Shown one piece after another: positions 3,528-38,970 of a stretch of 64,000 nucleotides of DNA (position 1 is the first letter of the stretch; the number at the start of each line of letters is the position of its first letter). The DNA is from Isurus oxyrinchus. Lineage: Eukaryota. The stretch spans positions 3,968,001 to 4,032,000 of the forward strand of contig JANJGN010000052.1 of NCBI GenBank assembly GCA_026770705.1. The letters run 5' to 3'. Made by a program: the position numbers and the translations under genes. The notes beneath the pieces were generated by a model. That model saw only the letters and a list, made by a program, of their open reading frames with translations. It made no database searches and was not told where the DNA came from.

Positions 3528-3573
3528 ATGGGAGAAGTCGGTCTGATATTGATCTTCATCAGCTTGCTGCAAG
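3528..3573 (+). CDS. Gene A signal peptide exon MGEVGLILIFISLLQ(V)
   Basis: Acceptor ttccatttag at 3512-3513, ATG at 3528, hydrophobic peptide, phase-1 donor CAAG|gtac; near-identical copy at 60335-60380. Confidence 0.8.
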
Positions 3574-4893
3574 GTACAAATTCATTACTGATCGGAACTC
3601 AGAGAATTGGATTCTTTCCTGGAGTGAGGAAGTGAGGAGGTTACAGAGAGAGGGAGGGTTGTAGATGCTGGAGGAGGTTACAAAGAGAGGGAGGGTTGTA
3701 GCAGCTGAAGGAGGTTACAGAGATAGGGAGGGTTGTCGGGGCTGGAGGAGGTTACAGAGATCGGGAGGGTTGTAAGGGCTGGAGGAGGTGACAGAGATAG
3801 GAAGTGGAGAGGAGTTTGTTGGGATTGGGAATTGAGAATGAGAAACTTAATATCAAGGCGTTGCTTGATTGGGAGCCTACAAAGGTCAGTGAGTGATGTG
3901 GGTGCGGGTTGGGTGGTTAAAGGCTGAGTAGAAGAGCAGGAATAACAACTGGGGATGAAGTCTTTCCCAATGTTAGGTGTCTGATAGCAATATCCTGAAA
4001 TTAGTGTCTTTTGCTGATTTTAATCAGAATTTCCCATGAAGACAACACAGCAGCTCCTAGAATAGACAGGCTGTTCAGTGTCACACTTCCTGTCCATTCT
4101 CACCTTGCTAGATACTTCAATAAGGGAGCAAGATAACTGAAAGAGAGAAGGAAGGTAAAGCTGTCCGTGTGTAAAGGTGTCAATATTCAGTTTGTATATT
4201 TGTCTTTGCTCTTGACACATGCAGAGCTCAGGCTAGAGGCACTGTGTTAGTGTGTTTCACAGTGTCTGCTGGAGTAGGGTCAGTGCTGAGCTTGGGGACA
4301 AGTCAGTCTACAATGCTGCATCGGAATCAACAATACAACAATATGGGGTTTGGATCAGAAATAATCCCTTAGACAATGAGGATCCAAAGAGATTCATTAA
4401 ACAATGAGGATCCAAAGAGATTCCTTAGATAATGAGGATCCAGAGATTCCTTAGCAATGAAGATAAAAATGCACCAATCAGATTGAATCAGATTAGCCAA
4501 TCAGCTGTGTTGAAGAGCAGACAGGAATGTTAGGCTAATTAGTGATTCATGACGGTGATAATGGGGGAGTGCTGAGGGCTCCTAATCCATTGTCCTGTCT
4601 TGTAAATCAGCACTGAATGGATCTCAATTGGTGCGTCCTGTAGATACTGTGTTGGGTGGAAGACTGGTTTCACTAAACAGGGTCCTGAGGACCATGAGCC
4701 AATGTAGAATGAACTTGTCCACTCCTATGTCCTGGATTCTCTTCCATTCGTTGTGAAATCTTGGGGAGATCCCCGTGTGTCCTGTAGATGGTCCACACTG
4801 CAGCCACTGTGCCCCAGTGATGGAGGGGGTGGATATCGAGTCTAGTGGATCTACAAACCATCCAAAGTAAAATATTGATATTTCTCTCCCCAG

Positions 4894-5259
4894 TTGGATT
4901 GTCACAAGAGTGGAAATGCGACATTCCACGAGATGTGACAGCGCAGGAAGGTTCCTGTGTACAGATTCCATGTCATTACAGTTATCCATCAGAGTTGGAA
5001 AACCAACCACGAGATGGAGTCTGGTTTAATAATGAAGAACGAGGAACATCGTCTATTGCCTTTCACTCCAAGGATCACAGTCACGAGTTACCACGGTTCC
5101 GCCATCGGACCCGGCTGTCTGGAGACCTGAAAGACGGTGACTGTTCCCTGATTATAAACAACATCAGACGGGAAGATGCAGGACATTATGTTTTCCGAAT
5201 AGAATTTGACAGCAGAAACAGTTACAGCTACCTTCCTGTAACCCAGCTTCACGTTTCTG
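4894..5259 (+). CDS. Gene A Siglec-type V-set Ig exon
   Basis: ctccccag acceptor, G|gtaagt donor; GSCVQIPC, DCSLII, EDAGHYVFRIE: B/E-strand Cys pattern and F-strand Arg typical of Siglec V domains. Confidence 0.9.
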
Positions 5260-6987
5260 GTAAGTGCTGTGTTATAATTACTCAACAATTCACATCCAAC
5301 ATTCAATGGGAAATAATAGTGTTTGATTTGCTTGTTTTTTGGCCGTGTTAACCAGCGTCACTATTTTTAATGATTTGTCTATTTCTGCTCCCAGATCCAT
5401 GAGCTTATTGTGTGTGATTGAATCCACATCATAGCTGTAACGTAAACCGAGCTGAGGGGTGATGACACCTCCCCCCTGAGTGAAGTGTCTCCTCCCCACT
5501 ACACCTTCCACCCCTCACACCATCAGGACTGACCTGGTGACAGCGCGGAGCTTATCACCAAATCACACCTTGGCTTGACCCCCACCCCCACCTCCTCTGG
5601 CACTTTCTGCTCCTTTGAATATCTCACCGTGTTCCACCCCTCTCATCTCTCCTTCTAAATTCTCGTTCTCTATCGCCGATCACTCCAGGAATGATAAGCA
5701 TCTTCGCCCCAGGATATCTTCACTGCTTTCCTCCCTCAGTCTCTGCACCGACTGAATTCCCATCCTCGGAGATCTCAATCTCCATCTCATCTCATCCCGC
5801 TCGGTTATTCCAACTCACTCCTGGCTGGTCTCGCACATTCTACCCTCTGTAAACTTGGGGTCATCTAAAACTCAGCTGCCCCTGTCTTAACCAGCAGTAA
5901 CTCCCGTTCCCCTATCCCCACTGTACTCTCTGACCTTGAGTGGCTCCTGGTCAAGGAGCCAATGATTTCATGATTTTAAAATGCTCGTCCTTGCTTCCTC
6001 CCTATCTCTGTAATCTCCTCCTGTGCGACAGCCTTCCCAGATTTCTGCACTCCTCTACCTCTGGACTCTTCAGCATCCCTGATTTCCATCGCTGCAGCAT
6101 GGACGGCCAAGCCTTCAGTAGCCTGGGTCCTGAGACTTAAATCCTTTCATCTTTCTATCTCCTCCTTTAAGGTGCTCCTTAAAACCCACCTCTTCAACCA
6201 AAGTTCTGATTGTCTGACCTAATATCTCCTTATATGGCGTGGGATCATACTTTGTATTATAATGCTCCTGTGGAGTTCCTTGGCATGTTATATTATAATA
6301 TAGGCACTATATAAATATAATCTATTGTTCTATGCTCCTCTAGACCATTTAGATTCTTACTTTCGAGTTAACATGCAACCTGGTAACCAGGTGATAGCTT
6401 CCAGTTCAGTTCGAAAGCAACCTCTAATACTCACTTTAATATCAATGATTCAATGTACTGAGTATGTCCATCAATGTTATCAGGTTATCCACTCCCATCG
6501 ATCTCTCTAATCCTGTCTCGAAGTCTGACATATCGACAGAAGAATGATTCACATTTCTGTAGCACATTTCACCACCTCAGCACAGACCAAATCACTTCAC
6601 AGCCAATGAGCTGATTCCTGAATTGTAGTTACTGTTGTAATGTGGGAAACACAACAACCAATTTGCGCACAGCAAGCTCCCACAAATTGACAGGTAACAA
6701 ATGACCTAGATCGCTGAGTGAATGATGGGGTAGTGCACTCCAAACTCTGGTCTGCTCCTCCACTCTCACCCACTATTATCACTTCAAGTTTCTCGGAGTG
6801 AACGTGTATTAAGCTGAGAGACAGAAACACCAAAGTCTCGAAGCAGTAAAGTCTCTCCTGATCGTTGTAACCTCTCAGATCTGATATCATCCTTGTAAAA
6901 GTTCTTTCTCTTGTGGGACTGTGGGTTCTATTTGAACTGATGCTTCACGTTATATTTCTCTAAAAGGATCCATTCCCTGTCTGTTAG

Positions 6988-7284
6988 ATTTCACAGATAA
7001 ACCCACGATATTCCCTGCTGAAATTATTGCAGGAAAGCGTGTGGATGTAAGCTGCACCTTCAACACAACGTGCAATGGAACAGCAGCACCTGTCTTAACC
7101 TGGGACACTCCCACTGACGTACGTGGATCAGTCTCAAACACTGTAACTCAGCATGGTGTCACTCTGACCTATACTTCTGTTCTGACCCTGATCCCATCAC
7201 CCAAACACCACGGACACACACTCAGCTGCAGAGTGAGATATCCATCTGTTTCATCGGAGCGGACCCTCGTACTCACTGTGCAAG
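6988..7284 (+). CDS. Gene A C2-set Ig exon (DFTDKP...VSCTFNTTCNGTAAPVLTW...LSCRV)
   Basis: ttag acceptor, G|gtaagt donor; extra Cys after the B-strand Cys as in Siglec domain 2. Confidence 0.9.
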
Positions 7285-7809
7285 GTAAGTACGGACGACC
7301 TTCATTCTACATTGGCCATTATAGTCCACATGTTTCACAGCAAAAACCCATAAAATACAGTTTGTTTAACAACAGATCATCTGCTTTTATTGATAAAAAT
7401 TCACCTCTGACATTGCAGAGCAACTTCCTACTGACCCCCCGACAGCGNNNNNNNNNNNNNNNNNNNNNNNNNNNNNNNNNNNNNNNNNNNNNNNNNNNNN
7501 NNNNNNNNNNNNNNNNNNNNNNNNNNNNNNNNNNNNNNNNNNNNNNNNNNNNNNNNNNNNNNNNNNNNNNNNNNNNNNNNNNNNNNNNNNNNNNNNNNNN
7601 NNNNNNNNNNNNNNNNNNNNNNNNNNNNNNNNNNNNNNNNNNNNNNNNNNNNNNNNNNNNNNNNNNNNNNNNNNNNNNNNNNNNNNNNNNNNNNNNNNNN
7701 NNNNNNNNNNNNNNNNNNNNNNNNNNNNNNNNNNNNNNNNNNNNNNNNNNNNNNNNNNNNNNNNNNNNNNNNNNNNNNNNNNNNNNNNNNNNNNNNNNNN
7801 NNNNNNNNN

Positions 7810-7868
7810 CTGCTGAGTGAGATATCCATCTGTTTCATTGGAGCGGACCCTCGTACTAACTGTGCTAT
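7810..7868 (+). pseudogene. 3' end of a duplicated C2 exon with AGA>TGA stop
   Basis: TGC TGA GTG AGA TAT CCA... CTA T|gtaagt matches CRVRYPSVS...TVQ of the C2 exons; 5' part lies in an N gap. Confidence 0.7.
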
Positions 7869-8547
7869 GTAAGTACAGACATCCTTCATTCCAGATTAGC
7901 TGGAATATTCTAGATTATGCATAGAAGGATCCCATAGAGAGGTATTGTGATGAGAAACAGATCATCTGTTTTTTCAGGAAAATAGTGACCAGCACAACAT
8001 TAATAACAGTTTCTGAACAGTAACACAGCGGCTTTTATTTACAGCCAAGAGACCGATAGAGCAGAGCAGGAATCACAATGTACTCACCCCCTGACAGTGC
8101 AGCACTCCCTCAGTACTGACCCTCTGACAGTGCAGCACTCCCTCAGTACTGACCCTCTGACAGTGCAGCACTCCCTCAGTACTGACCCTCTGACAGTGTA
8201 GCACTCCCTCTGTACAGACCCTCTGACAGTGCAGCACTCCCTCAGTACTGACCCTCCGACAGTGCAGCACTGCCTCAGGACTGACCCTCCGACAGTGCAG
8301 CACTCCCTCTATACTGACCCTCCAACAGTGCAGCACTCCTTCAGAACTGAACATTTGACAGTGCAGCACTCCCTCAGTACTGACCCTCTGACAGGTCAGC
8401 ACTCACTCCTTACTGAACTGAAGTGTCTGCCTGGGTTACGTGCTTTGTGGTGAAGGAACCTACATTGATATCACGCCTTTCACATTCTCAGTGTCTCTCA
8501 AAGTGCTTCACAGTCAGTGTAAGTAACTGATCTTCATTTGTTTTCAG

Positions 8548-8829
8548 ACACACCACAGAATCTCTCAATTACTTCTCTTGATATGATTAATGCTTCATCG
8601 ATCAATATAATTGAGGGGAATTCTGCAGTGATAACCTGCTCTGTCGAGAGCTTCCCAGCTTCTAACCTGACGTGGCGACATCTTAATGTCCCAATGAACA
8701 GAACAAGTTCCAACAATGAGCTGTGGTTGGTGATTCCTCACGTTACATCCAGGGACACTGGAGACTATCAGTGTGTGGCAGAGAATGAACATGGAGCAGT
8801 GGAGGGGTTCATAACCATCACTGTGGAAT
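8548..8829 (+). CDS. Gene A third Ig exon (C2/I-set)
   Basis: ttttcag acceptor, T|gtgagt donor; TPQNLSI...CSVESFPASNLTW...DTGDYQCVAEN. Confidence 0.9.
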
Positions 8830-9318
8830 GTGAGTTACACAGACTTCAACATCTCTCTCAGATTTGAACACATATACACAAATGATCTACCACATGCACA
8901 CACAAACATTCACTGCACTGGAGTCCCGGTGTCAGCTCTAATTCTGTGTTGAAGGAAGGGAAACTCCAGATCAACAAGACCCTGAATTGGATGGAGCAAC
9001 CTCCTGAACAGAGAAATGTAGATTTACCCCTCAGTGCTCCATTGGTCAAATACAATTCATTGCCTGCCCAGCCCTTGGTGAAATACTGAGGATGTGAATG
9101 GAAGGTTCTTTCATTCTAGATGGACAGCACCTCAATGGGTGGGAGAATGTAACTGCAGTGTGACAGTTTACATAGGCAGTATCCATTGTAAATGTGACAG
9201 AGGAACGTATGCTGAGGAAGGTGCCTGGAATTGCATTCAGACATCAGATACAGAGAGATGATGCATGGAGTCTTGCTGTGCACTGTGCTTGCTCACATTA
9301 AAATCTTTATGTTTTTAG

Positions 9319-9600
9319 ATGCCCCACAGAATCTCTCAATTACTTCTCTTTATATGATTAACGCTTCATCGATCAATATCATTGAGGAGAATTCTGCAGT
9401 AATAATCTGCTCTGTCGAGAGCTTCCCAGCTTCTAACCTGACGTGGCGACATCTTAATATCCCAATGAACAGAACAAGTTCCAACAATGAGCTGTGGTTG
9501 GTGATTCCTCATGTTACATCCAGGGACACTGGAGACTATCAGTGTGTGGCAGAGAATGAACATGGAGCAGTGGAGGGGGTCATAACCATCACTGTGGAAC
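9319..9600 (+). CDS. Gene A fourth Ig exon (tandem duplicate of the third)
   Basis: tttttag acceptor, C|gtgagt donor; 282 nt, near-identical to 8548-8829. Confidence 0.9.
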
Positions 9601-9629
9601 GTGAGTTACACAGAATTGAACGTTCTCTT

Positions 9630-10665: not shown

Positions 10666-10858
10666 CTGTTATATGTGAATCCTCCTTATAGAAACCTGCA
10701 TGTACATGGATATTATCAATAAATATTACATAGATAAATGTTATTTGTATAGATCTTTCATGCATAGACAATATCACTTCACAAGTTCAGAATTACTACA
10801 TGTACATAGGGAACCATTCTCAAACTGTACCGGAGTCATTCATTGGCTGATTTTACAG

Positions 10859-10955
10859 GGTGAGATTCCAATGAATGGAAAGCAGGATTGCTTGGAGCTG
10901 GAATCTGTTTGAGTGTTGGACTGAGTGGATTCTTCATCTTCAAGTGTGTGAGAAA
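10859..10955 (+). CDS. Gene A transmembrane exon with early stop: R*DSNEWKAGLLGAGICLSVGLSGFFIFKCVRK
   Basis: ttttacag acceptor, AA|gtaagt donor; 97 nt, collinear with the gene C TM exon 33349-33445. Confidence 0.8.
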
Positions 10956-11664: not shown

Positions 11665-11967
11665 ATTCCTGATTTGACTCACAGAGACACATCAACCGTT
11701 TCTCATTAAATACACAGAGGGAGCAGCACAGGAAGAGGTCATTCAGCCCAAGCAGAGCGTGTGGGCAGTTCCTCCCCAGGCGAGCAGTCGGACAGGTACT
11801 GGGTAAGTAACGGAACGATTGGAATTCCCTTCCACCACCAACACCGTCCTTTGTTGATGTTGTGACTTTATAAAGACAGATTCCAATGATTGATGCCTTT
11901 GAAAGATTTCTACTGATTATTGAGATCTGGGTGTGAGGCTCAAGTCTGTTGTACAGAACATCTTTCT
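11665..11967 (+). promoter_or_regulatory. Orphan copy of the B/C promoter-first-exon module inside gene A
   Basis: Near-identical to 17180-17470 and 24430-24707; donor GT at 11803; followed by a CR1 fragment rather than a leader exon. Confidence 0.65.
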
Positions 11968-12313
11968 GGTTAAATTATGCAGACAGGTTACACACAGTCT
12001 ACGATTATATTCCCTCAGGTCTAGGAGATTAAGGAGGGATCTAACTGAGGGGTTCATACTGATTAAACACTCGATAGGGTCGATAGAGAGAAGCTATTCC
12101 CTCGGGTGGGGGTGGGTGGTGGGGGTCGGGTGGAGTCCAGAACAAGGGGGCTGGAACTTCAGATTGGAGCCAGGCCATTTAGGGGTGATGTCAGGAAGCA
12201 CTTCTTCACACAAAGGGAAGTGGAAATCTGGAACTCTCTCCCCAATAATCAAACCCAACACCGAATACACATCATGTTGATTGTCACTCAGTCCATTTCC
12301 ATCTCTATTACAG

Positions 12314-12418
12314 AAGAGAGGCGAGGGGAAAGCAGGAATCAAATCGAACCACCGTGTTGATGAATATCGAGGTCCTGTTTATGAAAACTGTGAGCGTGGT
12401 TGGGCTTTGAGGAATCAG
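12314..12418 (+). CDS. Candidate cytoplasmic exon KRGEGKAGIKSNHRVDEYRGPVYENCERGWALRNQ
   Basis: ctctattacag acceptor, CAG|gtgagt donor, phase 0-0; paralogous to 14180-14296 including the upstream intron. Confidence 0.65.
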
Positions 12419-12552
12419 GTGAGTCACACACCACAGGATCCCCAGCCTCTCAGCTGCTCCAGTAGCCTGGTTATTGATATGGCTGCTCCAGTCCTGTATC
12501 TGCAATGTTTTATACAGTCACTCCCAAACCCAACCAAACTCACACCCAACAC

Positions 12553-14080
12553 CATTCAGAATCAATAATCAAACCCCGATCAGTATCAATAATCAAACCC
12601 CGTTCAGTATCAATAATCAAACCCCATTCAGAATCAATAATCAAACCCCGTTCAGTATCAATAATCAAACCCTGTTCAGAATCAATAATCAAACCCCATT
12701 CAGTATCAATAATCAAACCCCGTTCAGTATCAATACTCAAACCCCGTTCAGAATCAATAATCAAACCCCGTTCAGATTCAATAATCAAACCCCGTTCAGT
12801 ATCAATAATCAAACCCCGTTCAGCATCAATAATCAAACCCCGTTCAGATTCAATAATCAAACCCCGTTCAGAATCAATAATCAAACCCCGTTCAGAATCA
12901 ATAATCAAACCCCGTAAAGAATCAATAATCAAACCCCGTTCAGTTTTAATAATCAAACCCCGTTCAGATTCAATAATCAAACACCTTTCAGAATCAATAA
13001 TCAAACCCCGTTCAGAATCAATAATCAAACCCCATTCAGAATCAATAATCAAACCCCGTTCAGTATCAATAATCAAACTCTGTTCAGGATCAATAATCAA
13101 ACACCGTTCAGAATCAATAATCAAACCCCGTTCAGAATTAATTATCAAACCCCGTTCAATATCAATAATCAAACTTCGTTCAGGATCAATAATCGAACCC
13201 CGTTCAGAATCAATAATCAAACCCCATTCAGTATCAAGAATCAAACCCCGTTCAGAATCAATAATCAAACCCCATTCAGTATCAATAATCAAACTTCGTT
13301 CAGGATCAAGAATGAAACACCGTTCAGATTCAATAATCAAACCCCTTTCAGAATCAATAATCAAACCCCGTTCAGAATCAATAATCAAACCCCGTTCAGA
13401 ATTAATTATCAAACCCCATTCAATATCAATAATCAAACTTCGTTCAGGATCAATAATCAAACCCTGTTCAGCATCAATAATCAAACCCCATTCAGTATCA
13501 ATAATCAAACCCCGTTCAGTATCAATAATCAAACCCCGTTCAGAATCAATAATCAAACCCCGTTCAGTATCAATAATCAAACTTCGTTCAGTATCACTAA
13601 TCAAACACCGTTCAGATTCTATAATCAAACCCCGTTCAGTATCAATAATCAAACCCCATTCAGAATTAAAAATCAAACCCCGTTCAGTATCAATAATCAA
13701 ACCCCGTTCAGAATCAATAATCATACCCCTTTCAGTATCAATAATCAAACCCCGTTCAGTATCAATAATCAAACCCCATTCAGAATTAAAAATCAAACCC
13801 CGTTCAGTATCAATAATCAAACCCCGTTCAGAATCAATAATCAAACCCTGTTCAGTATCAATAATCAAACACCGTTCAGAATCAATAATCAAACCCCATT
13901 CAGTATCAATAATCAAACTTCGTTCAGGATCAATAATCAATCCCCGTTCAGTATCAATAATCAAACATCATTCAGAATTAAAAATCAAACCCCGTTCAGT
14001 ATCAATAGTCAAACCCCGTTCAGAATCAATAATCAAACCCTGTTCAGTATCAATAATCAAACTACGTTCAGTATCAATAA
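12553..14080. repeat. 24-bp minisatellite (cccgttcagwatcaataatcaaac)n, roughly 60 copies
   Basis: Visible tandem periodicity; explains spurious ORFs on both strands. Confidence 0.95.
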
Positions 14081-14179
14081 TTAATGTTTCTATTATGGTT
14101 GGAATTTTCGATTTGGATCAATAATACTAAACACTGATCACTCTGATTGTCACTCTGATCATTTCTGTTTCTATTACAG

Positions 14180-14296
14180 AAGAACGATGAGAAGGATCTG
14201 GAAATGAAATCTAACCGCGGAGTCAATCCTGATACAGATGATGATCTTTACGCAAACTGTGATTTTGCCAAGGATTCTGTTTATGGGAATTTATAA
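14180..14296 (+). CDS. Candidate terminal cytoplasmic exon KNDEKDLEMKSNRGVNPDTDDDLYANCDFAKDSVYGNL*
   Basis: ttctattacag acceptor; two YxN motifs at the C-terminus; TAA at 14294-14296. Confidence 0.7.
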   Translation, partial: KNDEKDLEMKSNRGVNPDTDDDLYANCDFAKDSVYGNL

Positions 14297-15628: not shown

Positions 15629-15629
15629 A

Positions 15630-16020: not shown

Positions 16021-16024
16021 GGGA

Positions 16025-17164: not shown

Positions 17165-17311
17165 CACTTCCTCATTTTGATTCACAGTGACACATCAACC
17201 CTTTCTAATTAAATACACAGAGGGAGCAGCACAGGAAGAGGTCATTCAGCCCAAGCAGAGCATGTGGGCAGTTCCTCCCCAGGCGAGCAGTCGGACAGGT
17301 CCTGGGTAAGT
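17165..17311 (+). promoter_or_regulatory. Putative promoter / non-coding first exon of gene B
   Basis: PU.1-like CACTTCCTCATTT at 17165, Ets-like CAGGAAG, donor TGG|GTAAGT at 17306; conserved upstream of gene C. Confidence 0.5.
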
Positions 17312-17755: not shown

Positions 17756-17795
17756 ATGATCGGGAAATCTTACTTTCTCTTGTCACTTCTCCAAG
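17756..17795 (+). CDS. Gene B signal peptide exon MIGKSYFLLSLLQ(V)
   Basis: Acceptor at 17714-17715, donor CAAG|gtaat; paralog at 24992-25031. Confidence 0.8.
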
Positions 17796-20700
17796 GTAAT
17801 ATCATCATCAGCTCGGATAGATTTATGTTTAACAGTCTTTGTAAAAGATCATTCTTATCTCTTTATCTCTGTAACCTCCTGCAACTCACCCAAACAACTT
17901 CCCAGATCTCTGTGTTAGTCCAATTCCGGCCTCTTGACCATCCCCCGATTCCCATCACTCCAATACTGGCGGCCGGGCCTTCAGCTGCCTGGGGCCTGAG
18001 CTCTGGAATTCACTCGCTAAACCTCGGGGATGGAGGAGATCAGATGGATTCATTTTACTGACAATCACCACGACCACATCACAGCTGCAGTGAGAATAGA
18101 CAGAGAGTCCAGCCCTCACACTTCCTGCACAGTTTCACCATAGCAACCACAATAAGGAAGTAAAATAACTGAAAGTTAAACCGAAGCCAAGCCAGTCAGT
18201 GTAGAGAGATGAGATGTTTACACAGTTTCCCTGTGTATCTTGTAGACACTGTGTTGGGTGGAAGACTGGCTTCACTAAACAGGGTCCTGAGGACCATGAG
18301 CCAATGTAGAATGAACTTGTCCACTCCTGTGTCCAGGAATCTCTTCCATCCATTGTGAAACCTTGGGGAGTTCCTTGTGTGTCCTGTAGATGGTCCACAC
18401 TGCAGCCACTGTGCCCCAGTGATGGAGGGAGTGGATATCGAGTCTAGTGGATCTACAAACTATCCAGAGTTAAATATTGATATTTCTCTCCCCAGTTGGA
18501 CTGTCACAAGAGTGGAAAGGCGACACTCCACGAGAGGTTGCAGCACAGGAAGGCTCGTGTGTACAGATTCCATGTCATTACAGTTACTCATCAAATTTAG
18601 TAGGGAGATCGCGTGTCAGAATCTGGTTGAAAGGAATAGATGTGAATCCACAGCCTAAATGGTCTATAGCCTTTCACTCCGAAGGTCACAGTCACAGGGA
18701 TCAAAGATTCCACCATCGGACCCGGCTGTCAGGAGACCTGAAAGATGGCGACTGTTCCCTGATTATAAATAACTTCAGACGGGAAGATGCGGGACCTTAT
18801 TTTTTCAGAATAGAATTTGACAATGGTCCGAGCCATAACTATTACCCTGTAACCCAGCTTCACATTTCTGGTAAGTGCTGTGTTATAATTACTCAACAAT
18901 TCACATTCAACACTTGATGGGAAATAACACAAACTGTGACGTTTACATATTAACACAAAACACAGCTTACACATCAGACACACTGTCTGATTCTCAATAA
19001 CCTGGTGATAGCTTCCAGTTCAGTCCTAAAGCAACCTCTAATACTCACTTTAATATCAATGATGAAAAGCATTAACTGTATTATCAGGTTATCCATTCCC
19101 ATCAATCTCTCCTGTCCTGTTTAAAAGTCTGACGTATCGATAAAAGAAAGATGTGCATTTCTGCAGCGCAATTTACCACCTCAGGAGGATCCAAATCCCT
19201 TCACAGCCAATGAAATTATTCCTGAATTGTAGTCACAGATGTAAAACACAGCAGGCAGATTGTGCACAGCAAGATCCAACAAACCACAAGGTGATAAATC
19301 ACCCAGATCACTGAGGAAATGAGAAGCCAGTGAACTCAAACCTCTGGTCTGATGAAGAGTCATACGGACTCGAAACGTTAACCCTGTCTTCCTCTCCACT
19401 GATACTATCAGACCTGCTGAGTCTTTCCAGCAATTTTTGTTTTGGTTTCAGATTTCCAGCATCCGCAGTATTCTGCATTTAACTCCAATCTCTGGTCTGA
19501 GCCTCTTCTCTCATCCAGTGTTCTCAATTCACATGTCTCGGAGTGAACGTGTATTAAGCTGAGAGACAGAAACACTACTGCCAAAGAGCAAGAAAATCTT
19601 TCCTGATCATTGTAACCTCTCAGTTCTGATATCATCCTTGTAAAAGTGCTTTCTCTTGTGGGACTGTGATTTCTATTTGAACTGATGCTTCACGTTATGT
19701 TTCTCTAAAAGGATCCATTCTCTTTCTGTTAGATTTCACAGATAAACCCACGATTTTCCCTGCTGAAATTATTGCAGGAAAGCGTGTGGATGTAAGCTGC
19801 ACCTTCAACACAACGTGCAATGGAACAGCAGCACCTGTCTTGACCTGGGACACTCCCACTGACGTACCTGGATCAGTCTCAAACACTGTAACTCAGCATG
19901 GTGTCACTCTGACCTATACTTCTGTTCTGACCCTGATCCCATCACTCAAACACCATGGACACACTCTCAGCTGCAGAGTGAGATATCCATCTGTTTCATC
20001 GGAGCGGACCCTCGTACTAACTGTGCAAGGTAATTACATACACTTTCATTCTACATCAGCACTCCCTCAGCGCTGACCCTCTGACAGTGCAGCCCGTTCT
20101 CAGTGTCCACATTCTCAGACCTCTCTAAGTGCTTCACAGTCGATAGAAGTTAATTGATCTTTATTTGATTATTGCTGAATGAAGAGACAAGCTGTCTAAA
20201 CTTTACATCTCGCACACACCATTCTCCACGGTAACACCTCCACCTATCAGAGACCACTTGCCAACCAATCAGCACTCTCTTCCCATTAAGTATAAATTGT
20301 TGTTCACTTTCTGTTGGTAATCCTGCGAACGTGCTTCTTGATTCCAGCCCTGACATCTTAATGTCCAAATGAACAGAACAAGTTCCAACAATGAGCTGTG
20401 GTTGGTGATTCCTCACGTTACATCCAGGGACACTGGAGACTATCAATGTGTGGCAGAGAATGAACATGGAGCAGTGGGGGTTTTCATAACCATCACTGTG
20501 GAACGTGAGTGTACACAGACTTCAACATCTCTCTCAGATTCAAACATTACACAAACACCCTCAAATATACAGAACTAAATAGACACGTGCAGACACACAT
20601 GTATGAGCAAATACAAAGACACACTCACGAGCAAACACACTAGCACACACTCCCCTGTGGTTTACCTGAGTACTGCACTGGAGAGTTGGCCTGGATTCTG

Positions 20701-22315
20701 GGATTTGTGTTCCCAATCATATTTATGGAAGTATATGGAAATTACAAAGTCTATTACAGACACTCAGATGCATAGAGGCTCTCACAGATACTCTCTGCCT
20801 CTCCAACTCTCTCTTTCCCTTTAAGAAGCTTCCTGAAAGCTAACCCTTCGAACAATCATCGGTCCCAACTCCTCCTTATCTGATTCTGTGTGATTTTGTT
20901 TGTGTATCTGAGAGTAAGAGAGAGGTGGAGAGGTTTAGTTAGAGAATTCCTGCTGGTGAAAAGCTTACATCATTTACTCACCTTTCCAGTGCACATATTT
21001 CCCAGTATGTCCAATGCCCCTGTTTATAATGATGACTGCCTATGTAAATGTCACGCTGTAGTTACATTCTCCCACCAGTGGTGGCATTGTAGCACTTAAT
21101 CCTTGTGTTTCCCAGCTTTTCAAGCAACTCCACTTCCCAGTTTGCTACACAAGCTGTGAGTTCATCAGAATTAAAATATTTCTCAAATGATAGATTTGAT
21201 AATTCATTTTATTGAAAACTTCCTCAGTGCCTCCCTGAAGGGTTTACACTCTCTGGGAAGCAGGAATAGGCTGGATGTTGGGGAGGTCATCTTTTCCCAG
21301 AGAGTAGGGATCCTTGAGAATGTGCTGTCAGTGGGTGTGGTAGTTCCTGTTTCTCTGTTGCCTTCAAGAGGGATCTGGAGTGGTTACTGACTGGGGGAGA
21401 GATCATGGAAGCGGAGAATGATACAGCACAGGAGGAGGCCATTCAGCCCATTGTGCCTGTGCCAGGTCTTTCAATGTTCTATCCAATCAGATCCACTAAC
21501 CAACACTCCACTTTGCCACCATCATCCTCCTTCAAGTGTTTATCCAATTTCCCTTTTGAAAGTTCCTATTGCATCTGCTTCCAGCGCCCTTTCAGGCAGA
21601 ACCTTCCAGATCACAACAACTCGCTCTGTCAAAACAAATTCTCCTCATCTCCACCTCCGGTTCGTCAATCTTGTCCCTCTGGTTACCGACCCTCCTGCCC
21701 CTTAAATACATCGATACTGTTCACTTCAACCAGTCCCAGTGAGAGCGAGTTCCACATTCTCCCCTCTCTCTGGGTAAAGATTGGAACTGTTCATTAAACG
21801 GGGTGTGTAAGTCCATGGGGGAGTCCATCTCGATCCTGCCCGATTCGCACACACGTCCGAGATGGATTTCCACCCTGCACTAAACGTTTCCAGAATTTTC
21901 TACAGCACAATCCTGTACACAGCGATGGAGAGAAACATTGGACAGGGAGTCCAACAGCACAATGATCCATTCTCACCAATGTTCCACGCTAAGGGGAAAG
22001 TTCCGATTGTCCACTCTTAGAGTGTTTACAATGAAAACATTCATTCCACATTGAATCCCAGTGGATGGGTCAATATTACAGCAAATGTTGCAGTGATATG
22101 AAGCTTGATTGTTCAGCCAGAGTGAGAGATTGAAAGCGGAGAGTCAGTGATGATTTCTTTCTGTGTGTTCTCTAGACAGTGGAGGAGAGATTCTGCACGT
22201 GATCCTGATCCTGGGAATACGAGCTGTGATATTCCTTGTGGCTGTGGTTATCACTATCGCTGGAGTCTGTGTCTGGGAGAGACAAACAGTGAAAGGAAGT
22301 CGACAGACTGTTTGA
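17756..22315 (+). CDS. Siglec-like gene B, activating type (leader-V-C2-[broken Ig]-TM with Arg)
   Basis: Exons 17756-17795, 18496-18870, 19733-20029 and 22176-22315 join in frame if the broken exon near 20351-20504 is skipped. Confidence 0.75.
18496..18870 (+). CDS. Gene B Siglec-type V-set exon
   Basis: GSCVQIPC, DCSLII, EDAGPYFFRIE; canonical splice sites. Confidence 0.9.
19349..19380 (+). ncRNA. Minimal hammerhead-ribozyme-like motif in a Penelope-derived insertion (19349-19480)
   Basis: CTGATGA-A-GAGTC-atacg-GACTC-GAAAC-GTTA. Confidence 0.5.
19733..20029 (+). CDS. Gene B C2-set exon
   Basis: 297 nt, near-identical to 6988-7284. Confidence 0.9.
20351..20504 (+). pseudogene. 3' half of the gene B third Ig exon; acceptor and 5' half replaced by foreign sequence (about 20168-20350)
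   Basis: HLNVQMNRTSSNNELW...YQCVAEN...TVE and the donor remain; homology to the paralog introns stops at gatctttatttg (20167). Confidence 0.8.
22176..22315 (+). CDS. Gene B TM + short tail exon: SGGEILHVILILGIRAVIFLVAVVITIAGVCVWERQTVKGSRQTV*
   Basis: gtgttctctag acceptor; phase-1 translation gives a hydrophobic helix with CGA (Arg) at 22220-22222; TGA at 22313-22315. Confidence 0.8.
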
Positions 22316-23035: not shown

Positions 23036-23574
23036 CTTATTCTTTCCATCAGCACAAACAGCAATTTCCAAGCGGACTCCCATCAGCAGACTGAGTGCAA
23101 TGAAACATCGGCATGCCTGCTTCTTAATGTACGGAGAGAATCCTGGAACGAGAGATTCTCCTTCTTCTCCTCAGCAAGCTGAAACTTTTCCTTATACCTG
23201 GTGCTCCCCAGTCCTGCTGTGTGGACACATCATAACCACGGCATTGATTAACACAAGTGATTAAAATGCTCAGGCTGTTCTGTAAATATTTACACATTAA
23301 AATTCTCATTTTACTGCAAATTCTTGGCTCAAAGACATTACTTCATGTTGTGATGATTTTCCAATCATGTGAATTATTGTGCCCATCATTATAATGGAAA
23401 CTTCCCATGTAAACATGTCACATTGTAGTTAGGCACTCCTGCCATTGGGTGGTGTGATATCAAAGCTGCCTTGCTGCTCAGAAACAGCGAGAAATATTCC
23501 TGTTCTAAATTTGAAGTTAGTGAGACAAAGGCATTAGATGCAATTTTGTGAAACTTGTACAATGTTCTTTAGAT

Positions 23575-24230
23575 AGTGCAGCACTCCCTCAGTACTGACC
23601 CTCCAACAGTGCAGCACTCCCTCAGTACTGACCCTCCAACAGTGCAGCACTCCCTCAGTACTGACCATACAAGAGTGCAGCACTCCCTCAGTACTGACCA
23701 ACCGACAGTGCAGCACTCCCTCAGTACTGACCCTCCAACAGTGCAGCACTCCCTCAGTACTGACCCTCCAACAGTGCAGCACTCCCTCAGTACTGACCAT
23801 ACAAGAGTGCAGCACTCCCTCAGTACTGACCAACCGACAGTGCAGCACTCCCTCAGTACTGACCCTCCAACAGTGCAGCACTCCCTCAGTACTGACCATA
23901 CAAGAGTGCAGCACTCCCTCAGTACTGACCAACCGACAGTGCAGCACTCCCTCAGTACTGACCCTCCAACAGTGCAGCACTCCCTCAGTACTGACCCTCT
24001 GACAGTGCAGCACTCTCTCAGTACTGACCCTCTGACAGTGCAGCACTCCCTCAGTACTGACCCTCTGACAGTGCAGCACGCCCTCAGCAACAATACAACA
24101 ATACTCTACAGTGCAGAACTCCTTTGCTGCTGACCCTCCAACAGAGCAGCACTTCTTCAGACCTGATCCTGCGACAGAGCAGCACCCCATCAGAACTGAC
24201 CCCTAATGGTGCCGCACTTGCTCAGTATTT
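23575..24230. repeat. 33-bp minisatellite (cagtgcagcactccctcagtactgaccctcyra)n; also at about 2113-2307, 8080-8410, 31830-32170, 35320-35440, 38300-38600, 50740-51075, 53000-53110, 57080-57190
   Basis: Tandem repeats seen directly; a Deu-domain SINE origin is inferred from recollection of the motif. Confidence 0.9.
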
Positions 24231-24415
24231 ACCCTGCAACAGCACAATTTAATATTAACCCTCGGAGCCATGGTAGAAAACTGACGTTACCAAATAGCAA
24301 ACAACAGAAGAGAAGCATCACAGAGTCACAATAAATAGGTCAAAAGTGTGATTATGTTGTAACGCTTTGTGGTATGAAGCACTCATTCCTACTGCCTGTT
24401 TACTCACTCCTTTGC

Positions 24416-24548
24416 TACTTCCTCATTTTGTCTCACAGAGACACATCAACCCTTTCTAATTAAATACACAGAGGGAGGTCATTCAGCCCAAGCAGAGCGT
24501 GTGGGCAGTTCCTCCCCAGGCGAGCAGTCGGACAGGTCCTGGGTAAGT
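24416..24548 (+). promoter_or_regulatory. Putative promoter / non-coding first exon of gene C
   Basis: TACTTCCTCATTT; donor GT at 24543; lacks the gcagcacaggaaga segment present in the other two copies. Confidence 0.5.
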
Positions 24549-37000: not shown

Positions 37001-38970
37001 TTATTGCAGGAGAAAGACAGCGATGGAGGAGAGAGTTTCAGGGACCAGTGACATTGCATTGACCCCCAGTCCACTCTCTGTGAATCACCAGGTACAGGAA
37101 CTGTTTACACTCACTCCAAAGCTTCAATCTCAGTGTGTAGACAACACATGTCCCAGATTCCCAGCCCAGTTACCCACTGATTTGTACCTGTGGAGTCAGC
37201 AATGGTTCAGTATCATGCTGTCTCTCTGTTATGACACAGCAACTGGTAAAGGCTGTTGTTTAAAATCCCAGAGGGAAACTTTAAACAACTGTCATAACCT
37301 ATATTTCCCAGTGGAATGTTTGAGATGCAGCTCTAAATTCAGGAATTAGACCACCGTTCTCGAGATGGTTTTATATCAAACTACATGAAACATTTATTAA
37401 TTTACACAAGTTAAATATATGCACATGGCTACAAACTAGTGTTATCATAACTTTTTAACAAATTCTCAAACTAATCTCCGCTAAGACAACCCATAGTCTT
37501 TAAGCAGATTCCAGGCAAAGCATTTTCACCTCACAAATTCCAAATGAGGTTCCTTTCACTTTGGTTCCTTTGCAGACAGGTGTAGGCTTACAGCTGCTTT
37601 GATGTTACAAGCCTCTGCTCTGCACACACAAAACTGCTCAAGTTATACCCAGCTCTTGAGTGTAAAGAAGACGGAGATTGATGGGCTCTTGATTGGTCAG
37701 GGGATCAAAGGTTAGGAGAGAAGGTGGGAGAATGGGGTTTGTGAAACATATCAGCCATGTATGAATGGTGGAGCAGACTCGATGGACCGAATGGTCTAAT
37801 TTCTCCTCCTCTGTCGTATGGTCTTATGGCTTCTGTTTGAAGGTAAATTCGCAATGTATCATCAGGACCTTTGAACTCCATCTCTTCCAATAATAAATCC
37901 CCTTTCATCGTATCAATTTTATTAGTAATATAAACGTTGATTGGTTTAAGATTTCAATCTCAGGCTTTGAATGTTTTATTTAAAAATGCAAATTACCACT
38001 TTACCTCTTTGTTTGCATCTCAAAACTACTATACATCAAAGCACACAGACTGGCTGTCTTTAATCCAATTTAAATACACACAGACACACACACAGACTAA
38101 ACCTCTGTTTAAAAAGACAGTTTGCAATTACATTACATACATTAATAGATTAATAACACTCTGTCTCTGTCCCTTCATCTCTATCTCTCTCTCTAATCCT
38201 CTCTCTGATTACAAGGTTCATGTTATTGAGCCTCACACCAGGCACCTGAGTGCAGAATCCAAGCCGTCACTCACCAGAGCCATTACCGAGGGATTGCGAG
38301 ACTGACAGAGGGTCAGTACTGAGGGTGTGCTGCACTGCTGGAGGGTCAGTACTGAGGGAGTGCTGCACTGTTGGAGGGTCAGTACTGAGGGAGTGCTGCA
38401 CTGACAGAGGGTCAGTACTGAGGGAGTGCTGCACTGTCGGAGGGTCAGTACTGAGGGAGTGCTGCACTGACAGAGGGTCAGTACTGAGGGAGCGCTGCAT
38501 TGTCGGAGGGTCAGTACTGAGGGAGTGCTGCACTGTCAGAGGTTCAGTACTGAGGGAGTGCTGCACTGTTGGAGGGTCAGTACTGAGGGAGTGCTGTACT
38601 GCCATAGGTGGTTTCTTTTCTCCGATAGGAGAGAGAGAATTAAACGAGTCTGCACAATAATTTAACCCTATCAGTACCAGTAAATGATGTGTGGATGTCT
38701 TCTGTTTCCATTTCTCTGTAGGATGAACAGAACGTGCTGATTACTGAGCCCAGGGACACAACCAGAGACACAACTAGTGAGGGGGAGACCCCAGCTCCCC
38801 GGGGTCTCTCTGAAGGTCCAGTGGGAGGCGATGTTGGACATGGGAACTCCGACAAACCAGGTGAGCATCTCTACGCCAACATCAACTTTTCAAAGCTGCC
38901 CAGTGGTGACAGGACTGTGCACAGGAGCGAGGACACGGAATACGCACAGATCAGGTTCCAGAAAAACTGA
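24992..38970 (+). CDS. Siglec-like gene C, inhibitory/switch type (leader-V-C2-Ig-TM-tail 1 or tail 2)
   Basis: Open, phase-compatible exons 24992-25031, 25926-26294, 27606-27902, 32315-32596, 33349-33445, then 34167-34248 + 35582-35830 or 37010-37091 + 38722-38970; the gap 32619-33253 could hide another exon. Confidence 0.85.
25926..26294 (+). CDS. Gene C Siglec-type V-set exon
   Basis: GSCVQMRC, DCSLII, EDAGPYYFRIE; canonical splice sites. Confidence 0.9.
27606..27902 (+). CDS. Gene C C2-set exon
   Basis: 297 nt; T|gtaagt donor. Confidence 0.9.
28090..29809 (-). mobile_element. Degenerate CR1 LINE ORF2 (endonuclease end to RT)
   Basis: VPEDWRMANVVPL..KG...NYRPVSLTSVVGK, QHGFVKGRSCLTNL, SGVPQGSVLG. 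Confidence 0.9.
29810..31796 (-). mobile_element. Internally deleted Gypsy LTR retrotransposon nested in CR1
   Basis: Diverged LTRs at about 29810-30108 and 31498-31796, PPT-like agggggaagga next to the 3' LTR, PBS-like tgggggtgaggatg, gag (WSQCVERLVFFFTAN) and integrase (PYRPASNGRAE, PAELL) remnants. Confidence 0.85.
32315..32596 (+). CDS. Gene C third Ig exon (YAPQNLSI...TVE)
   Basis: 282 nt; canonical splice sites; near-identical to gene A exons 3 and 4. Confidence 0.9.
33349..33445 (+). CDS. Gene C TM exon RRDTSKWTVGLFTAGIMLSVLLAEIFIFICVRK
   Basis: ttttacag acceptor, AA|gtaagt donor; hydrophobic helix. Confidence 0.85.
34167..34248 (+). CDS. Gene C tail cassette 1, exon a (RKTVMEERVSGTSDIALTPSPLSVKHQ)
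   Basis: ttattgcag acceptor, CAG|gtacag donor; phase 2 to 0 links the TM exon and the terminal exon. Confidence 0.75.
34384..35137 (-). mobile_element. Solo-LTR-like element (duplicated copy about 37227-38157 carries an extra CR1 tail at about 37660-37830)
   Basis: TGTTATGA...TCATGACA termini; end resembles the reverse complement of 39264-40225. Confidence 0.55.
35582..35830 (+). CDS. Gene C tail cassette 1, terminal exon (...EEFLYANPQV...EETEYAQIRFEHN*)
   Basis: tgtctgtag acceptor; Siglec-like tandem Tyr motifs; AATAAA at 36386-36391. Confidence 0.85.
   Translation, partial: GKQNVLITEPQNIKRDATGEGETPAPRGLSEDAVGGDVGHGNPDKSEEFLYANPQVLRMSSGDGSVHREEETEYAQIRFEHN
37010..37091 (+). CDS. Gene C tail cassette 2, exon a (RKTAMEERVSGTSDIALTPSPLSVNHQ)
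   Basis: Duplicate of 34167-34248 with intact splice sites. Confidence 0.75.
38722..38970 (+). CDS. Gene C tail cassette 2, terminal exon (...EHLYANINF...EDTEYAQIRFQKN*)
   Basis: ttctctgtag acceptor; open frame; YxxI and TxYxxI motifs. Confidence 0.85.
   Translation, partial: DEQNVLITEPRDTTRDTTSEGETPAPRGLSEGPVGGDVGHGNSDKPGEHLYANINFSKLPSGDRTVHRSEDTEYAQIRFQKN

What the first reader, a model, noticed from the sequence alone, without database searches (positions are those of the whole stretch)
3528..38970. Paired activating/inhibitory Siglec-like receptor cluster with shared ectodomains and three different signalling ends
Seen: genes A, B and C share nearly identical C2/Ig exons and Siglec-type V exons, yet end differently. 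B has an Arg-containing TM and no Tyr; C has ITIM-like and TxYxxI tails; A has a stop at the TM plus YxN-rich exons. Known: this is the architecture of paired receptors (Siglec-5/14, Siglec-11/16, LILR, KIR). Inference: an independently expanded paired Siglec-like family in a probable cartilaginous fish. I cannot confirm novelty without a database and literature search.
Basis: partly seen in the sequence, partly recalled or inferred. Interest (0 to 1): 0.88.

Follow-up and report, generated by a model that had tools for sequence, protein, structure and literature searches.

The report
Shark Siglec receptor genes, swapped tails
This stretch of a shark genome holds three duplicated Siglec-type (sialic-acid-lectin) immune receptor genes with very similar outer domains but an activating-type, an inhibitory-type and a third kind of signalling end; the design is real and partly expressed, but automatic annotation already predicts it in many sharks and rays.

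Summary
Three tandem genes at 3528-38970 share a leader, a Siglec-type V exon, a C2 exon and Ig exons. All Ig exons are phase 1-1 with AG/GT borders. C2/Ig proteins are 94-99% identical and V proteins about 75%.

- **Gene B** (V-C2, then a TM exon with an in-membrane Arg and a 12-residue Tyr-free tail) is spliced exactly as predicted in contigs of four public runs.
- **Gene C** ends in a TM exon plus two cytoplasmic cassettes, each carrying LYAN and TEYAQI motifs. White-shark and basking-shark RefSeq models join such cassettes in tandem.
- **Gene A** carries a third, YxN-rich tail. It is in phase once an overlooked exon (11718-11802) is added. Its TM exon has an in-frame TGA where the basking-shark model has Arg.

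The V exon matches Siglec V-sets first by sequence and by predicted fold, and the sialic-acid Arg is in place.

All three tail types recur in RefSeq models auto-named Siglec, CD33-like or MAG-like in other sharks; the inhibitory and YxN types also occur in rays. No protein is identical to the window's. I found no paper on shark Siglec pairs. The scan has already found such clusters elsewhere in this genome. Ligand, adaptor and inhibitory function remain inferred. Verdict: new member of a known kind.

The parts
3528..3573 (+). Gene A leader exon (MGEVGLILIFISLLQ, donor G|GT, phase 1). It is identical to the leader at 60335-60380 of a fourth, different Siglec-like gene.
4894..5259 (+). Gene A V-set exon with the Siglec Arg (YVFRIEF) and the three-Cys pattern
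   Evidence: colinear with Cetorhinus P0187
6988..7284 (+). Gene A C2-set exon (three Cys, Siglec domain-2 type)
7448..7809 (.). Assembly gap. The flanks are not continuous in homologous coordinates. It was not filled.
7810..7868 (+). 3' end of a second C2 exon copy with an in-frame TGA at 7814-7816. It is either a pseudo-exon or a scaffolding artefact.
8548..8829 (+). Gene A Ig3 exon (I-set/Ig_3)
9319..9600 (+). Gene A Ig4 exon, a tandem copy of Ig3 (94% DNA identity)
10859..10955 (+). Gene A TM exon (phase 1 to 2) with an in-frame TGA at 10861-10863, followed by DSNEWKAGLLGAGICLSVGLSGFFIFKCVR
   Evidence: Cetorhinus P0187 has Arg at the stop position.
11718..11802 (+). Gene A cytoplasmic exon X (phase 2 to 0; GSSTGRGHSAQAERVGSSSPGEQSDRYW). 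Copies lie upstream of the B and C leaders (17220-17304 and 24473-24543).
12314..12418 (+). Gene A tail exon 1 (phase 0; EYRG and VYENC motifs)
14180..14296 (+). Gene A tail exon 2 with stop (LYANC x7 VYGNL-COOH)
17756..17795 (+). Gene B leader exon (MIGKSYFLLSLLQ)
   Evidence: spliced joint 17795|18496 in run X2
18496..18870 (+). Gene B V-set exon (YFFRIEF; Arg codon at 18807-18809)
   Evidence: joint 18870|19733 in four runs
19733..20029 (+). Gene B C2-set exon
   Evidence: joint 20029|22176 in four runs
20352..20504 (+). Gene B remnant of an Ig3 exon (3' half only, no acceptor), skipped in transcripts
22176..22315 (+). Gene B last coding exon: a TM with an in-membrane Arg (ILHVILILGIRAVIFLVAVVITIAGVCVW), then ERQTVKGSRQTV and stop; no Tyr
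   Evidence: 91-96% identical in Carcharodon models
24992..25031 (+). Gene C leader exon (MIGKYYCLLSLLQ)
25926..26294 (+). Gene C V-set exon (YYFRIEF)
27606..27902 (+). Gene C C2-set exon
32315..32596 (+). Gene C Ig3 exon
32619..33252 (.). Assembly gap inside the intron between Ig3 and the TM exon. It could hide a second Ig3-type exon. It was not filled.
33349..33445 (+). Gene C TM exon (RDTSKWTVGLFTAGIMLSVLLAEIFIFICVR; phase 1 to 2)
34167..34248 (+). Gene C cytoplasmic exon cyt-a (phase 2 to 0)
35582..35830 (+). Gene C cytoplasmic exon cyt-b (FLYANPQV ... TEYAQIRFEHN, stop). An internal GT donor follows 35814.
37010..37091 (+). Second cassette, exon cyt-a' (93% protein identity to cyt-a)
38722..38970 (+). 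Second cassette, exon cyt-b' (HLYANINF ... TEYAQIRFQKN, stop)

Best explanation
The region is part of a large, tandemly duplicated family of Siglec-type (CD33-like) immune receptor genes in a shark. The proteins are closest to those of lamniform sharks.

Each gene is built from exchangeable modules: a leader, a sialic-acid-lectin V-set exon, a C2 exon, zero to two further Ig exons, and one of three signalling ends.

**Gene B** is an activating-type receptor (V-C2). Its membrane span carries an Arg and it has a 12-residue tail without Tyr. By analogy with Siglec-14, -15 and -16, the Arg would pair with an acidic residue of an ITAM adaptor such as DAP12 or FcR-gamma.

**Gene C** is an inhibitory-type receptor (V-C2-Ig3-TM). 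Its tail carries LYAN and TEYAQI motifs. TEYAQI fits TxYxxI, like the distal TEYSEI/V motif of CD33-related Siglecs, and would recruit SH2 phosphatases. The tail cassette is duplicated and may be used alone, or both in tandem through an internal donor.

**Gene A** (V-C2-Ig3-Ig4-TM-X-t1-t2) carries a third, YxN-rich tail ending in YxxC-x7-YGNL. This would fit Grb2-type or ITAM-like signalling. In this assembly a TGA at the second codon of its TM exon makes it a null allele or a secreted form, unless an AG six bases downstream is used as acceptor.

**Shown:** the exon structure, the Siglec sequence and fold signature, splicing of B, and conservation of all three ends in other sharks, two of them also in rays.

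**Inferred:** sialic-acid binding, the adaptor partner, phosphatase or Grb2 recruitment, and expression of A and C.
For: - **Exon map:** phase-consistent exons with canonical splice sites.
- **Siglec signature, sequence:** PDB sequence matches are Siglecs first, with the essential Arg aligned to the YYFRGD of MAG and the YFFRVE of Siglec-5. Pfam V-set and Ig_CD22 score above cut-off. The C2 exon matches domain 2 of CD33, MAG, Siglec-10 and Siglec-5.
- **Siglec signature, fold:** Siglecs fill the top 32 Foldseek ranks for the predicted V fold.
- **Splicing of B:** GT..AG joints at 17795|18496, 18870|19733 and 20029|22176 in contigs of runs from two labelled organisms and three studies.
- **Colinear models:** Cetorhinus P0187 (557 aa) is colinear with gene A on seven of its eight coding exons; exon X matches separately (85%). 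Carcharodon P0183 has C's V-C2-Ig3-Ig3-TM-cyt-a order. Carcharodon P0176, P0180 and P0194 end in B's Arg-TM exon at 91-96% identity.
- **Wider conservation:** the Arg-TM exon is also found in Scyliorhinus and Chiloscyllium. The YGN[ILV] tail is found in 16 fetched proteins, including Mobula rays.
- **Selection:** purifying selection on C2 (omega 0.07-0.26) and on the V frameworks (0.12-0.41), with omega about 1.1 in the C-C' loop region.
- **Tree:** the V domains of B and C are sisters (98/89), and V domains do not sort by tail type (at least 9 changes among 17 rows).
Against: - No binding, adaptor or signalling data exist.
- Only B was tested against RNA data, and only as contigs of runs whose RNA nature is a guess.
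- A has a stop codon before its TM and an unresolved gap with a stop-bearing second C2 copy.
- C's proximal motifs (FLYANP, HLYANI) miss the ITIM consensus [ILVS]xYxx[ILV], which several orthologues do meet (LLYANI, LLYINV, LLYASI).
- B and C differ at a quarter of their V residues, mostly in the specificity loop. They need not see the same ligand, which is the point of a strict pair such as Siglec-5/14.
Confidence: 0.75

Rival explanations
1. This is a duplicated gene family in decay. Only some copies, such as B, work. A is a pseudogene, C's second cassette and the exon-X copies are relics of unequal crossing-over, and no matched activating/inhibitory pair acts on a common ligand here.
For: - TGA in A's TM exon and TGA in the second C2 copy.
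- Half an Ig3 exon in B.
- Exon-X copies stranded upstream of the B and C leaders.
- A's leader is borrowed from another gene type.
- Reverse-transcriptase fragments and satellites fill the introns.
- V identity between B and C is only 75%.
Against: - B is spliced as predicted.
- All of C's exons, and A's exons apart from the one codon, are open and 79-96% identical to basking-shark models.
- dN/dS is below 1 in the framework regions.
- The two-cassette layout is kept in white-shark and basking-shark models.
Confidence: 0.2
2. These are Siglec-fold IgSF receptors whose real ligands are not sialoglycans, for example proteins or other acidic glycans. The Siglec name would then describe ancestry only.
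For: - No binding data exist.
- Several mammalian Siglecs bind independently of the Arg (abstract of PMC12953582, listed).
- Orthologues of the neighbouring gene D type have Tyr in place of the Arg (YYFYVD in P0217).
Against: - The canonical Arg is nearly invariant in a 20-sequence elasmobranch alignment, as are the N-terminal Trp (W6) and a Tyr (Y115) near the C-terminal end of the V domain.
- The Arg aligns with the ligand-binding Arg of MAG and Siglec-5.
- The best structural matches are sialoside-bound Siglec V-sets.
Confidence: 0.12
3. The apparent triplication is an assembly artefact, from collapsed or duplicated haplotigs around the gaps.
For: There are eight N runs in the window, and gap 7448-7809 has a duplicated C2 end on its far side.
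Against: - The copies differ by 5-17% in DNA and have different V loops and different 3' exons.
- B's own exon chain is confirmed by independent runs.
- The same multi-gene layout is annotated in other shark genomes.
Confidence: 0.03

Closest known systems
Human paired Siglecs, Siglec-5 (inhibitory) and Siglec-14 (activating, DAP12-coupled through a TM Arg); PMC4042635 as listed
   Same: Neighbouring genes have related V and C2 domains. One has a Tyr-motif tail. The other has a basic residue in the membrane span and a short tail. Ectodomain exons are homogenised between the genes (C2 dS 0.05-0.07).
   Different: [quoted passage not shown] Here B and C share 75% identity, with most changes in the C-C' loop. 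The shark Arg-TM exon shows no detectable sequence relation to the mammalian one. The adaptor is unknown.
CD33-related Siglecs (CD33/Siglec-3, Siglec-7, -8, -10)
   Same: V-set with the essential Arg and the Siglec Cys pattern, and a C2 domain with an extra Cys. The tail carries a proximal xLYAxI/L-type motif and a distal TEYxxI motif, encoded by a TM exon plus two cytoplasmic exons. The comparison of motifs rests on my own knowledge of CD33 (LHYASL ... TEYSEV).
   Different: Only 23-28% identity in V. Synteny was not tested. The tail cassette is duplicated. The proximal motif is degenerate in this window. Published work states that fish genomes lack CD33-related Siglecs (PMC7226832; based on teleosts).
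MAG (Siglec-4)
   Same: It is the best single PDB sequence match of the V exon (3.4e-13). Its Ig4 is among the matches of the Ig3 exon. RefSeq names some relatives 'MAG-like'.
   Different: MAG is a single conserved five-domain gene of the nervous system with a different tail. Here there is a multigene family with two to four domains and immune-type signalling ends.
RefSeq (Gnomon) models in other elasmobranchs: Cetorhinus XP_078389734-type 'Siglec-12/13' models, Carcharodon XP_041037177/79/80 'CD33-like', Scyliorhinus torazame XP_072325011 'CD33-like'
   Same: The same exon modules and all three tail types, at 75-98% identity per exon.
   Different: They are predictions with arbitrary human-derived names, and none is identical to the window's products. 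I found no paper describing them.
KIR, LILR and PILR paired receptor families
   Same: Multigene clusters that mix ITIM-tailed members with charged-TM members, and that evolve by duplication and exon shuffling.
   Different: They belong to different Ig families and bind different ligands. PILR V-sets appear only from rank 39 among the fold matches.

Membership tests
Siglec family (I-type sialic-acid lectins) | N-terminal V-set Ig domain most similar to known Siglec V-sets | tested here: met
   The top 17 PDB sequence hits are Siglecs. Pfam Ig_CD22 scores 38-44 bits against a cut-off of 27. Foldseek ranks 1-32 are sialoadhesin, MAG, CD33 and Siglec-7, -8, -10, -15, with TM up to 0.88.
Siglec family (I-type sialic-acid lectins) | Conserved Arg that binds the sialic-acid carboxylate | tested here: met
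   Y[VFY]FRIEF in A, B and C. It aligns with the YYFRGD of MAG and the YFFRVE of Siglec-5. R104 is nearly invariant in 20 elasmobranch sequences.
Siglec family (I-type sialic-acid lectins) | Siglec Cys pattern: three Cys in V (two near the N-terminal end, one in DCSL, none at the usual Ig YxC position) and three Cys in the first C2 domain | tested here: met
   V has SCVQ.PC and DCSL, with FR in place of YxC. C2 has VSCTFNTTCNG ... LSCRV, aligned to CD33 LTCSVSWACEQ ... LTCQV. Assigning these Cys to particular strands and disulfides rests on my own knowledge.
Siglec family (I-type sialic-acid lectins) | Binding of sialylated glycans | not testable with these tools
   This needs recombinant protein and glycan arrays.
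CD33-related Siglec subgroup | Tail with a membrane-proximal ITIM and a distal ITIM-like (TEYSEI/V-type) motif | tested here: inconclusive
   The distal TEYAQI is present in both cassettes. The proximal FLYANP and HLYANI miss the ITIM consensus at position -2 or +3. Orthologues have LLYANI, LLYINV or LLYASI.
CD33-related Siglec subgroup | Orthology or synteny with the mammalian CD33rSiglec cluster | not tested
   No flanking non-Siglec genes lie in the window, and no mammalian sequences could be put in the tree. V is about equally close to MAG and to CD33-type Siglecs.
Paired activating/inhibitory receptors (Siglec-5/14 type) | Neighbouring genes with near-identical ligand-binding domains | tested here: inconclusive
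   C2 is 99% identical, and the V domains of B and C are sisters in the tree (98/89). However, V is only 75% identical, with omega about 1.1 in the specificity loop.
Paired activating/inhibitory receptors (Siglec-5/14 type) | One partner with a basic residue inside the TM and a short tail lacking Tyr, expressed as such | tested here: met
   Exon 22176-22315 is joined to C2 in four runs. It is conserved in Carcharodon, Scyliorhinus and Chiloscyllium.
Paired activating/inhibitory receptors (Siglec-5/14 type) | Association of the charged-TM partner with an ITAM adaptor, and opposite signalling by the two partners | not testable with these tools
   No shark adaptor sequence was at hand. A literature search gave nothing on shark DAP12.

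The most novel reading that the evidence does not exclude
The full Siglec signalling toolkit would be an old feature of elasmobranchs, shared across orders that split hundreds of millions of years ago, rather than a mammalian innovation. The toolkit comprises an Arg-TM activating end, a CD33-type LxYAxI...TEYxxI inhibitory tail, and a third YxN-rich, ITAM-like tail (YxxC/W-x7-YxN[ILV]-COOH) not known from mammalian Siglecs. In addition, sharks would tune inhibitory strength by chaining whole tail cassettes through an internal splice donor.
Probability: 0.35. Interest if true: 0.65.

Novelty: new member of a known kind. Interest (0 to 1): 0.45.

Why it matters
Published comparative work states that fish lack CD33-related, inhibitory Siglecs and that only Siglec-1, CD22, MAG and Siglec-15 are regularly present (PMC7226832, based on teleosts). 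A large shark family contradicts that picture in three ways:

- It has Siglec V-sets joined to activating-type, inhibitory-type and a third type of tail.
- The activating member is visibly spliced in RNA data.
- All three ends are conserved across shark orders, and two of them into rays.

This suggests that modular on/off sialic-acid sensing is much older, or much more easily re-invented, than the mammalian literature implies. It also offers a natural system for studying exon shuffling between receptor heads and tails.

The value of this particular window is limited. Automatic annotation already predicts these proteins in many elasmobranchs, and the scan has already met the same design elsewhere in this genome.

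Tried and rejected
1. I first read A's tail exons (12314, 14180) as out of phase with the TM donor, so not part of gene A. I rejected this after homologues revealed exon X (11718-11802), which restores the phase.
2. I took the ORF at 34066-34569 for C's TM. I rejected this: it is cyt-a plus intron, and the real TM exon is 33349-33445.
4. A search with a turtle Siglec, meant to fetch mammalian references for the tree, returned only turtle proteins. The tree therefore has no mammalian Siglecs, and I make no claim about orthology to CD33rSiglecs or MAG.
5. A search restricted to the Arg-TM region found only sharks. It is word-limited and length-limited, so absence from rays is not shown.
6. Five literature searches found no paper on shark or ray Siglec clusters, and one more found nothing on shark DAP12. 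Subscription journals are largely outside that library.
7. A 30-base loose end joined to C2 in run X1 has no match in the window. It comes from a paralogue elsewhere.
8. Spliced (joined-exon) protein models were never sent to any search or folding tool. Every search was done exon by exon, by reference, or with natural proteins returned by the tools.
9. The N runs were not filled.

Full report
**What is there.** The window has 46.5% G+C and a CpG observed/expected ratio of 0.29. It has eight N runs and many satellites and retroelement fragments, as expected for a vertebrate genome. A self-comparison shows three copies of one unit. The V-exon regions are 83-87% identical in DNA, the C2-exon regions 86-92% and the Ig3 regions 88-95%.

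I mapped the exons by reading frame, splice sites and phase. All Ig exons are phase 1-1 with AG/GT borders. The finding's limits are exact: 3528 is the ATG of A's leader, and 38970 is the last base of the stop codon of the second tail cassette.

**The three genes.**

| Gene | Exon chain (window coordinates, + strand) |
|---|---|
| A | leader 3528-3573, V 4894-5259, C2 6988-7284, [gap], Ig3 8548-8829, Ig4 9319-9600, TM 10859-10955, X 11718-11802, t1 12314-12418, t2 14180-14296 |
| B | leader 17756-17795, V 18496-18870, C2 19733-20029, Ig3 remnant 20352-20504 (3' half only), TM-and-stop exon 22176-22315 |
| C | leader 24992-25031, V 25926-26294, C2 27606-27902, Ig3 32315-32596, [gap], TM 33349-33445, cyt-a 34167-34248, cyt-b 35582-35830 (stop), then cyt-a' 37010-37091 and cyt-b' 38722-38970 |

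- Protein identity between copies is 97-99% for C2, 94-97% for Ig3-type exons and about 75% for V.
'Shared ectodomains' is only loosely true for the lectin domain.

**The gaps, tested first.**

- *Gap 7448-7809.* The left flank is the intron after A's C2 exon and aligns to C's intron up to 28064. The right flank, 7810-7907, aligns to C 27844-27941 and to A's own 7226-7307 at 90%. So the sequence restarts about 220 bases 'earlier' in homologous coordinates, inside the 3' end of a second C2 copy that carries TGA at 7814-7816. The two sides are not continuous. Either a second, dead C2 exon sits there, or the scaffold joins two things. That A's 5' and 3' halves belong to one gene is supported only by colinearity with a basking-shark model (below).
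- *Gap 32619-33252.* It lies between two intronic flanks, and the exons on either side are both phase 1. A second Ig3-type exon could hide in it.
- I did not fill either gap.

**Is it a Siglec?** Yes, by every sequence and fold test available.

- The V exons reach Pfam V-set and the Siglec-specific Ig_CD22 model above cut-off.
- The 17 best PDB sequence matches are all Siglecs: MAG at 3.4e-13, then Siglec-5, Siglec-7, sialoadhesin, CD33, Siglec-8 and Siglec-10. The Arg of YYFRIEF aligns to the ligand-binding Arg of MAG and Siglec-5.
- The Cys pattern is the Siglec one: three Cys in V with none at the usual YxC position, and three Cys in C2, aligned with CD33.
- An AlphaFold model of B's V exon (pLDDT 88.6) has Siglec V-sets as Foldseek ranks 1-32, led by sialoside-bound sialoadhesin with TM up to 0.88.
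- Sialic-acid binding itself is inferred.

**The three ends.**

- *Gene B.* The last exon encodes SGGEILHVILILGIRAVIFLVAVVITIAGVCVWERQTVKGSRQTV and then stop. That is a strongly hydrophobic span with one Arg in its outer third, and a 12-residue tail without Tyr.
- *Gene C.* The TM is uncharged apart from one Glu. Its tail reads K-RKTVMEER...KHQ-GKQNVL...EEFLYANPQVL...ETEYAQIRFEHN. The second cassette has GEHLYANINF...DTEYAQIRFQKN. TEYAQI fits TxYxxI. The proximal motifs miss the ITIM consensus in this window (F or H at -2, P at +3 in cassette 1). Orthologues have LLYANI, LLYINV or LLYASI, which fit it.
- *Gene A.* I first thought the YxN exons were out of phase with the TM donor (phase 2). White-shark and bamboo-shark proteins showed a missing exon between them. 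It lies at 11718-11802 (phase 2 to 0) and makes the chain TM-X-t1-t2 consistent. The tail holds VYENC and LYANC and ends in SVYGNL. Across sharks and a ray the end reads [IL]Y[AK][NS][CW]-x7-[VI]Y[GV]N[ILV]-COOH. This has ITAM-like spacing, an imperfect first half, and several YxN (Grb2-type) sites. Its function is a guess.
- *The stop in A.* A's TM exon starts GG TGA GAT. With the acceptor shared with C this gives an in-frame stop at codon 2, where the basking-shark model has Arg. An AG six bases downstream would keep the frame and skip the stop, but nothing shows that it is used.

- Contigs of four public runs (two labelled organisms, three studies) carry GT..AG joints exactly at 17795|18496 (one run), 18870|19733 (all four) and 20029|22176 (all four).
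- Depth is concentrated on the exons, and the Ig3 remnant is skipped.
- The runs are only guessed to be RNA. The intron-less joints are themselves the evidence, and a processed DNA copy is not formally excluded.
- A loose end shows C2 joined to the start of an Ig3-type exon at the predicted acceptor, one mismatch from A's Ig4.
- A and C have no read evidence.

**Relatives.**

- A full HMMER scan with C's V exon found 1039 proteins, 28 of them below 1e-30.
- The ones I looked up are RefSeq or UniProt predictions from about 20 sharks and rays. They carry arbitrary names: Siglec-5, -7, -8, -10, -12, -13, -14, CD33-like, MAG-like.
- None is identical to the window's exons. The closest are from Carcharodon carcharias and Cetorhinus maximus (85-98% per exon). 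The source is therefore a shark, probably a lamniform or close to one.
- Cetorhinus P0187 (557 aa) lies colinearly on seven of gene A's eight coding exons, from V to t2. Exon X was matched separately at 85%.
- Carcharodon P0176, P0180 and P0194 are V-C2 proteins ending in B's Arg-TM exon (91-96% identical). The exon recurs in Scyliorhinus and Chiloscyllium.
- Carcharodon P0183 has C's V-C2-Ig3-Ig3-TM-cyt-a order.
- Carcharodon P0191 and P0168 and Cetorhinus P0189 join two tail cassettes in one protein (...TEYAQI-R-RKTAM...). This uses a donor inside cyt-b. The window keeps that donor (AG|GT after 35814) and the matching phase-2 acceptor at 37010.
- The two cassettes may therefore be chained, not only chosen between. 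That is a reading from predicted models, not from reads.

**Evolution.**

- C2 exons have dS 0.05-0.07 and omega 0.07-0.26.
- V frameworks have omega 0.12-0.41, but the C-C' loop segment has omega about 1.1 with dN up to 0.77. The stalk is conserved and the specificity loop is diverse.
- In a V-domain tree the elasmobranch sequences form one group (support 94/95), apart from turtle (98/99) and osteoglossomorph teleost Siglec-like proteins.
- B and C are sisters in that tree (98/89). Tail type needs at least 9 changes among 17 labelled rows, so heads and tails have been shuffled.
- A itself is a mosaic. Its leader is identical to that of a fourth, different gene at 60335, while its first intron matches C's.
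- The tree has no mammalian sequences, so ancient origin and convergence with CD33-related Siglecs remain undecided.

**Known or new.**

- Paired Siglecs are described in primates (for example PMC4042635).
- A study of fish Siglecs states that fish genomes lack CD33-related Siglecs (PMC7226832; based on teleosts).
- I found no paper on shark Siglec clusters.
- The proteins are, however, already predicted by automatic annotation in many elasmobranchs.
- Notes of this scan show that other agents reached the same reading on several other stretches of this same genome.
- I therefore rate it a new member of a known kind, of moderate interest. The third tail and the chained cassettes are the least expected parts.

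Noticed in passing
60335-61487 (+): A fourth Siglec-like gene (D). Its leader at 60335-60380 is identical to A's. Its V exon (61194-61487) is 93% identical to Cetorhinus P0217. That V type has Tyr where Siglecs have the essential Arg (YYFYVD in P0217). In the window the V exon stops matching at 61487, and unannotated ORFs without Pfam hits follow, so it looks interrupted.
   Followed up: partly
17220-17304 and 24473-24543 (+): Copies of gene A's cytoplasmic exon X, with their splice sites, sit about 450 bases upstream of the B and C leader exons. The C copy has a short deletion. Cetorhinus isoforms P0184 and P0185 read from a true exon X into such a copy and on into the next gene's leader and V exon out of frame. 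This hints at read-through transcripts or at use as a 5' non-coding exon.
   Followed up: partly
12548-14081: A 24-bp satellite of about 1.5 kb lies between the two paralogous tail exons t1 and t2 of gene A. The upstream intron ends of the two exons are alike.
   Followed up: no
8080-8416, 23572-24242, 31831-32170, 35281-35443, 38281-38608, 50713-51069: A 33-bp satellite (reads LSTDPPTVQHS in one frame) recurs on both strands. In A and C it lies just upstream of the Ig3 exon, and in C it lies inside both tail cassettes.
   Followed up: no
28450-28851 (-) and 40246-40710 (+): Reverse-transcriptase fragments (Pfam RVT_1). The first lies inside gene C's 4.4-kb intron between C2 and Ig3.
   Followed up: partly
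42540-46997 (-): A 1485-codon open frame made of a Pro/Ser/Leu/His-rich simple repeat (PPHPLLIPSSS...). This is a low-complexity satellite, not a gene by any test made here.
   Followed up: no
51862-55544 and 55944-59608; also 612-1750: A 3.7-kb segment is duplicated in tandem at 95% identity, and part of it is repeated near the window's start at 98%. It is flanked by N runs and rich in TC/CA-type simple repeats.
   Followed up: no
4896-5258 (+): A's V exon has an extra Cys near its N-terminus (EWKCDIP, where B and C have EWKGDTP). This unpaired Cys is not seen in the other copies.
   Followed up: no
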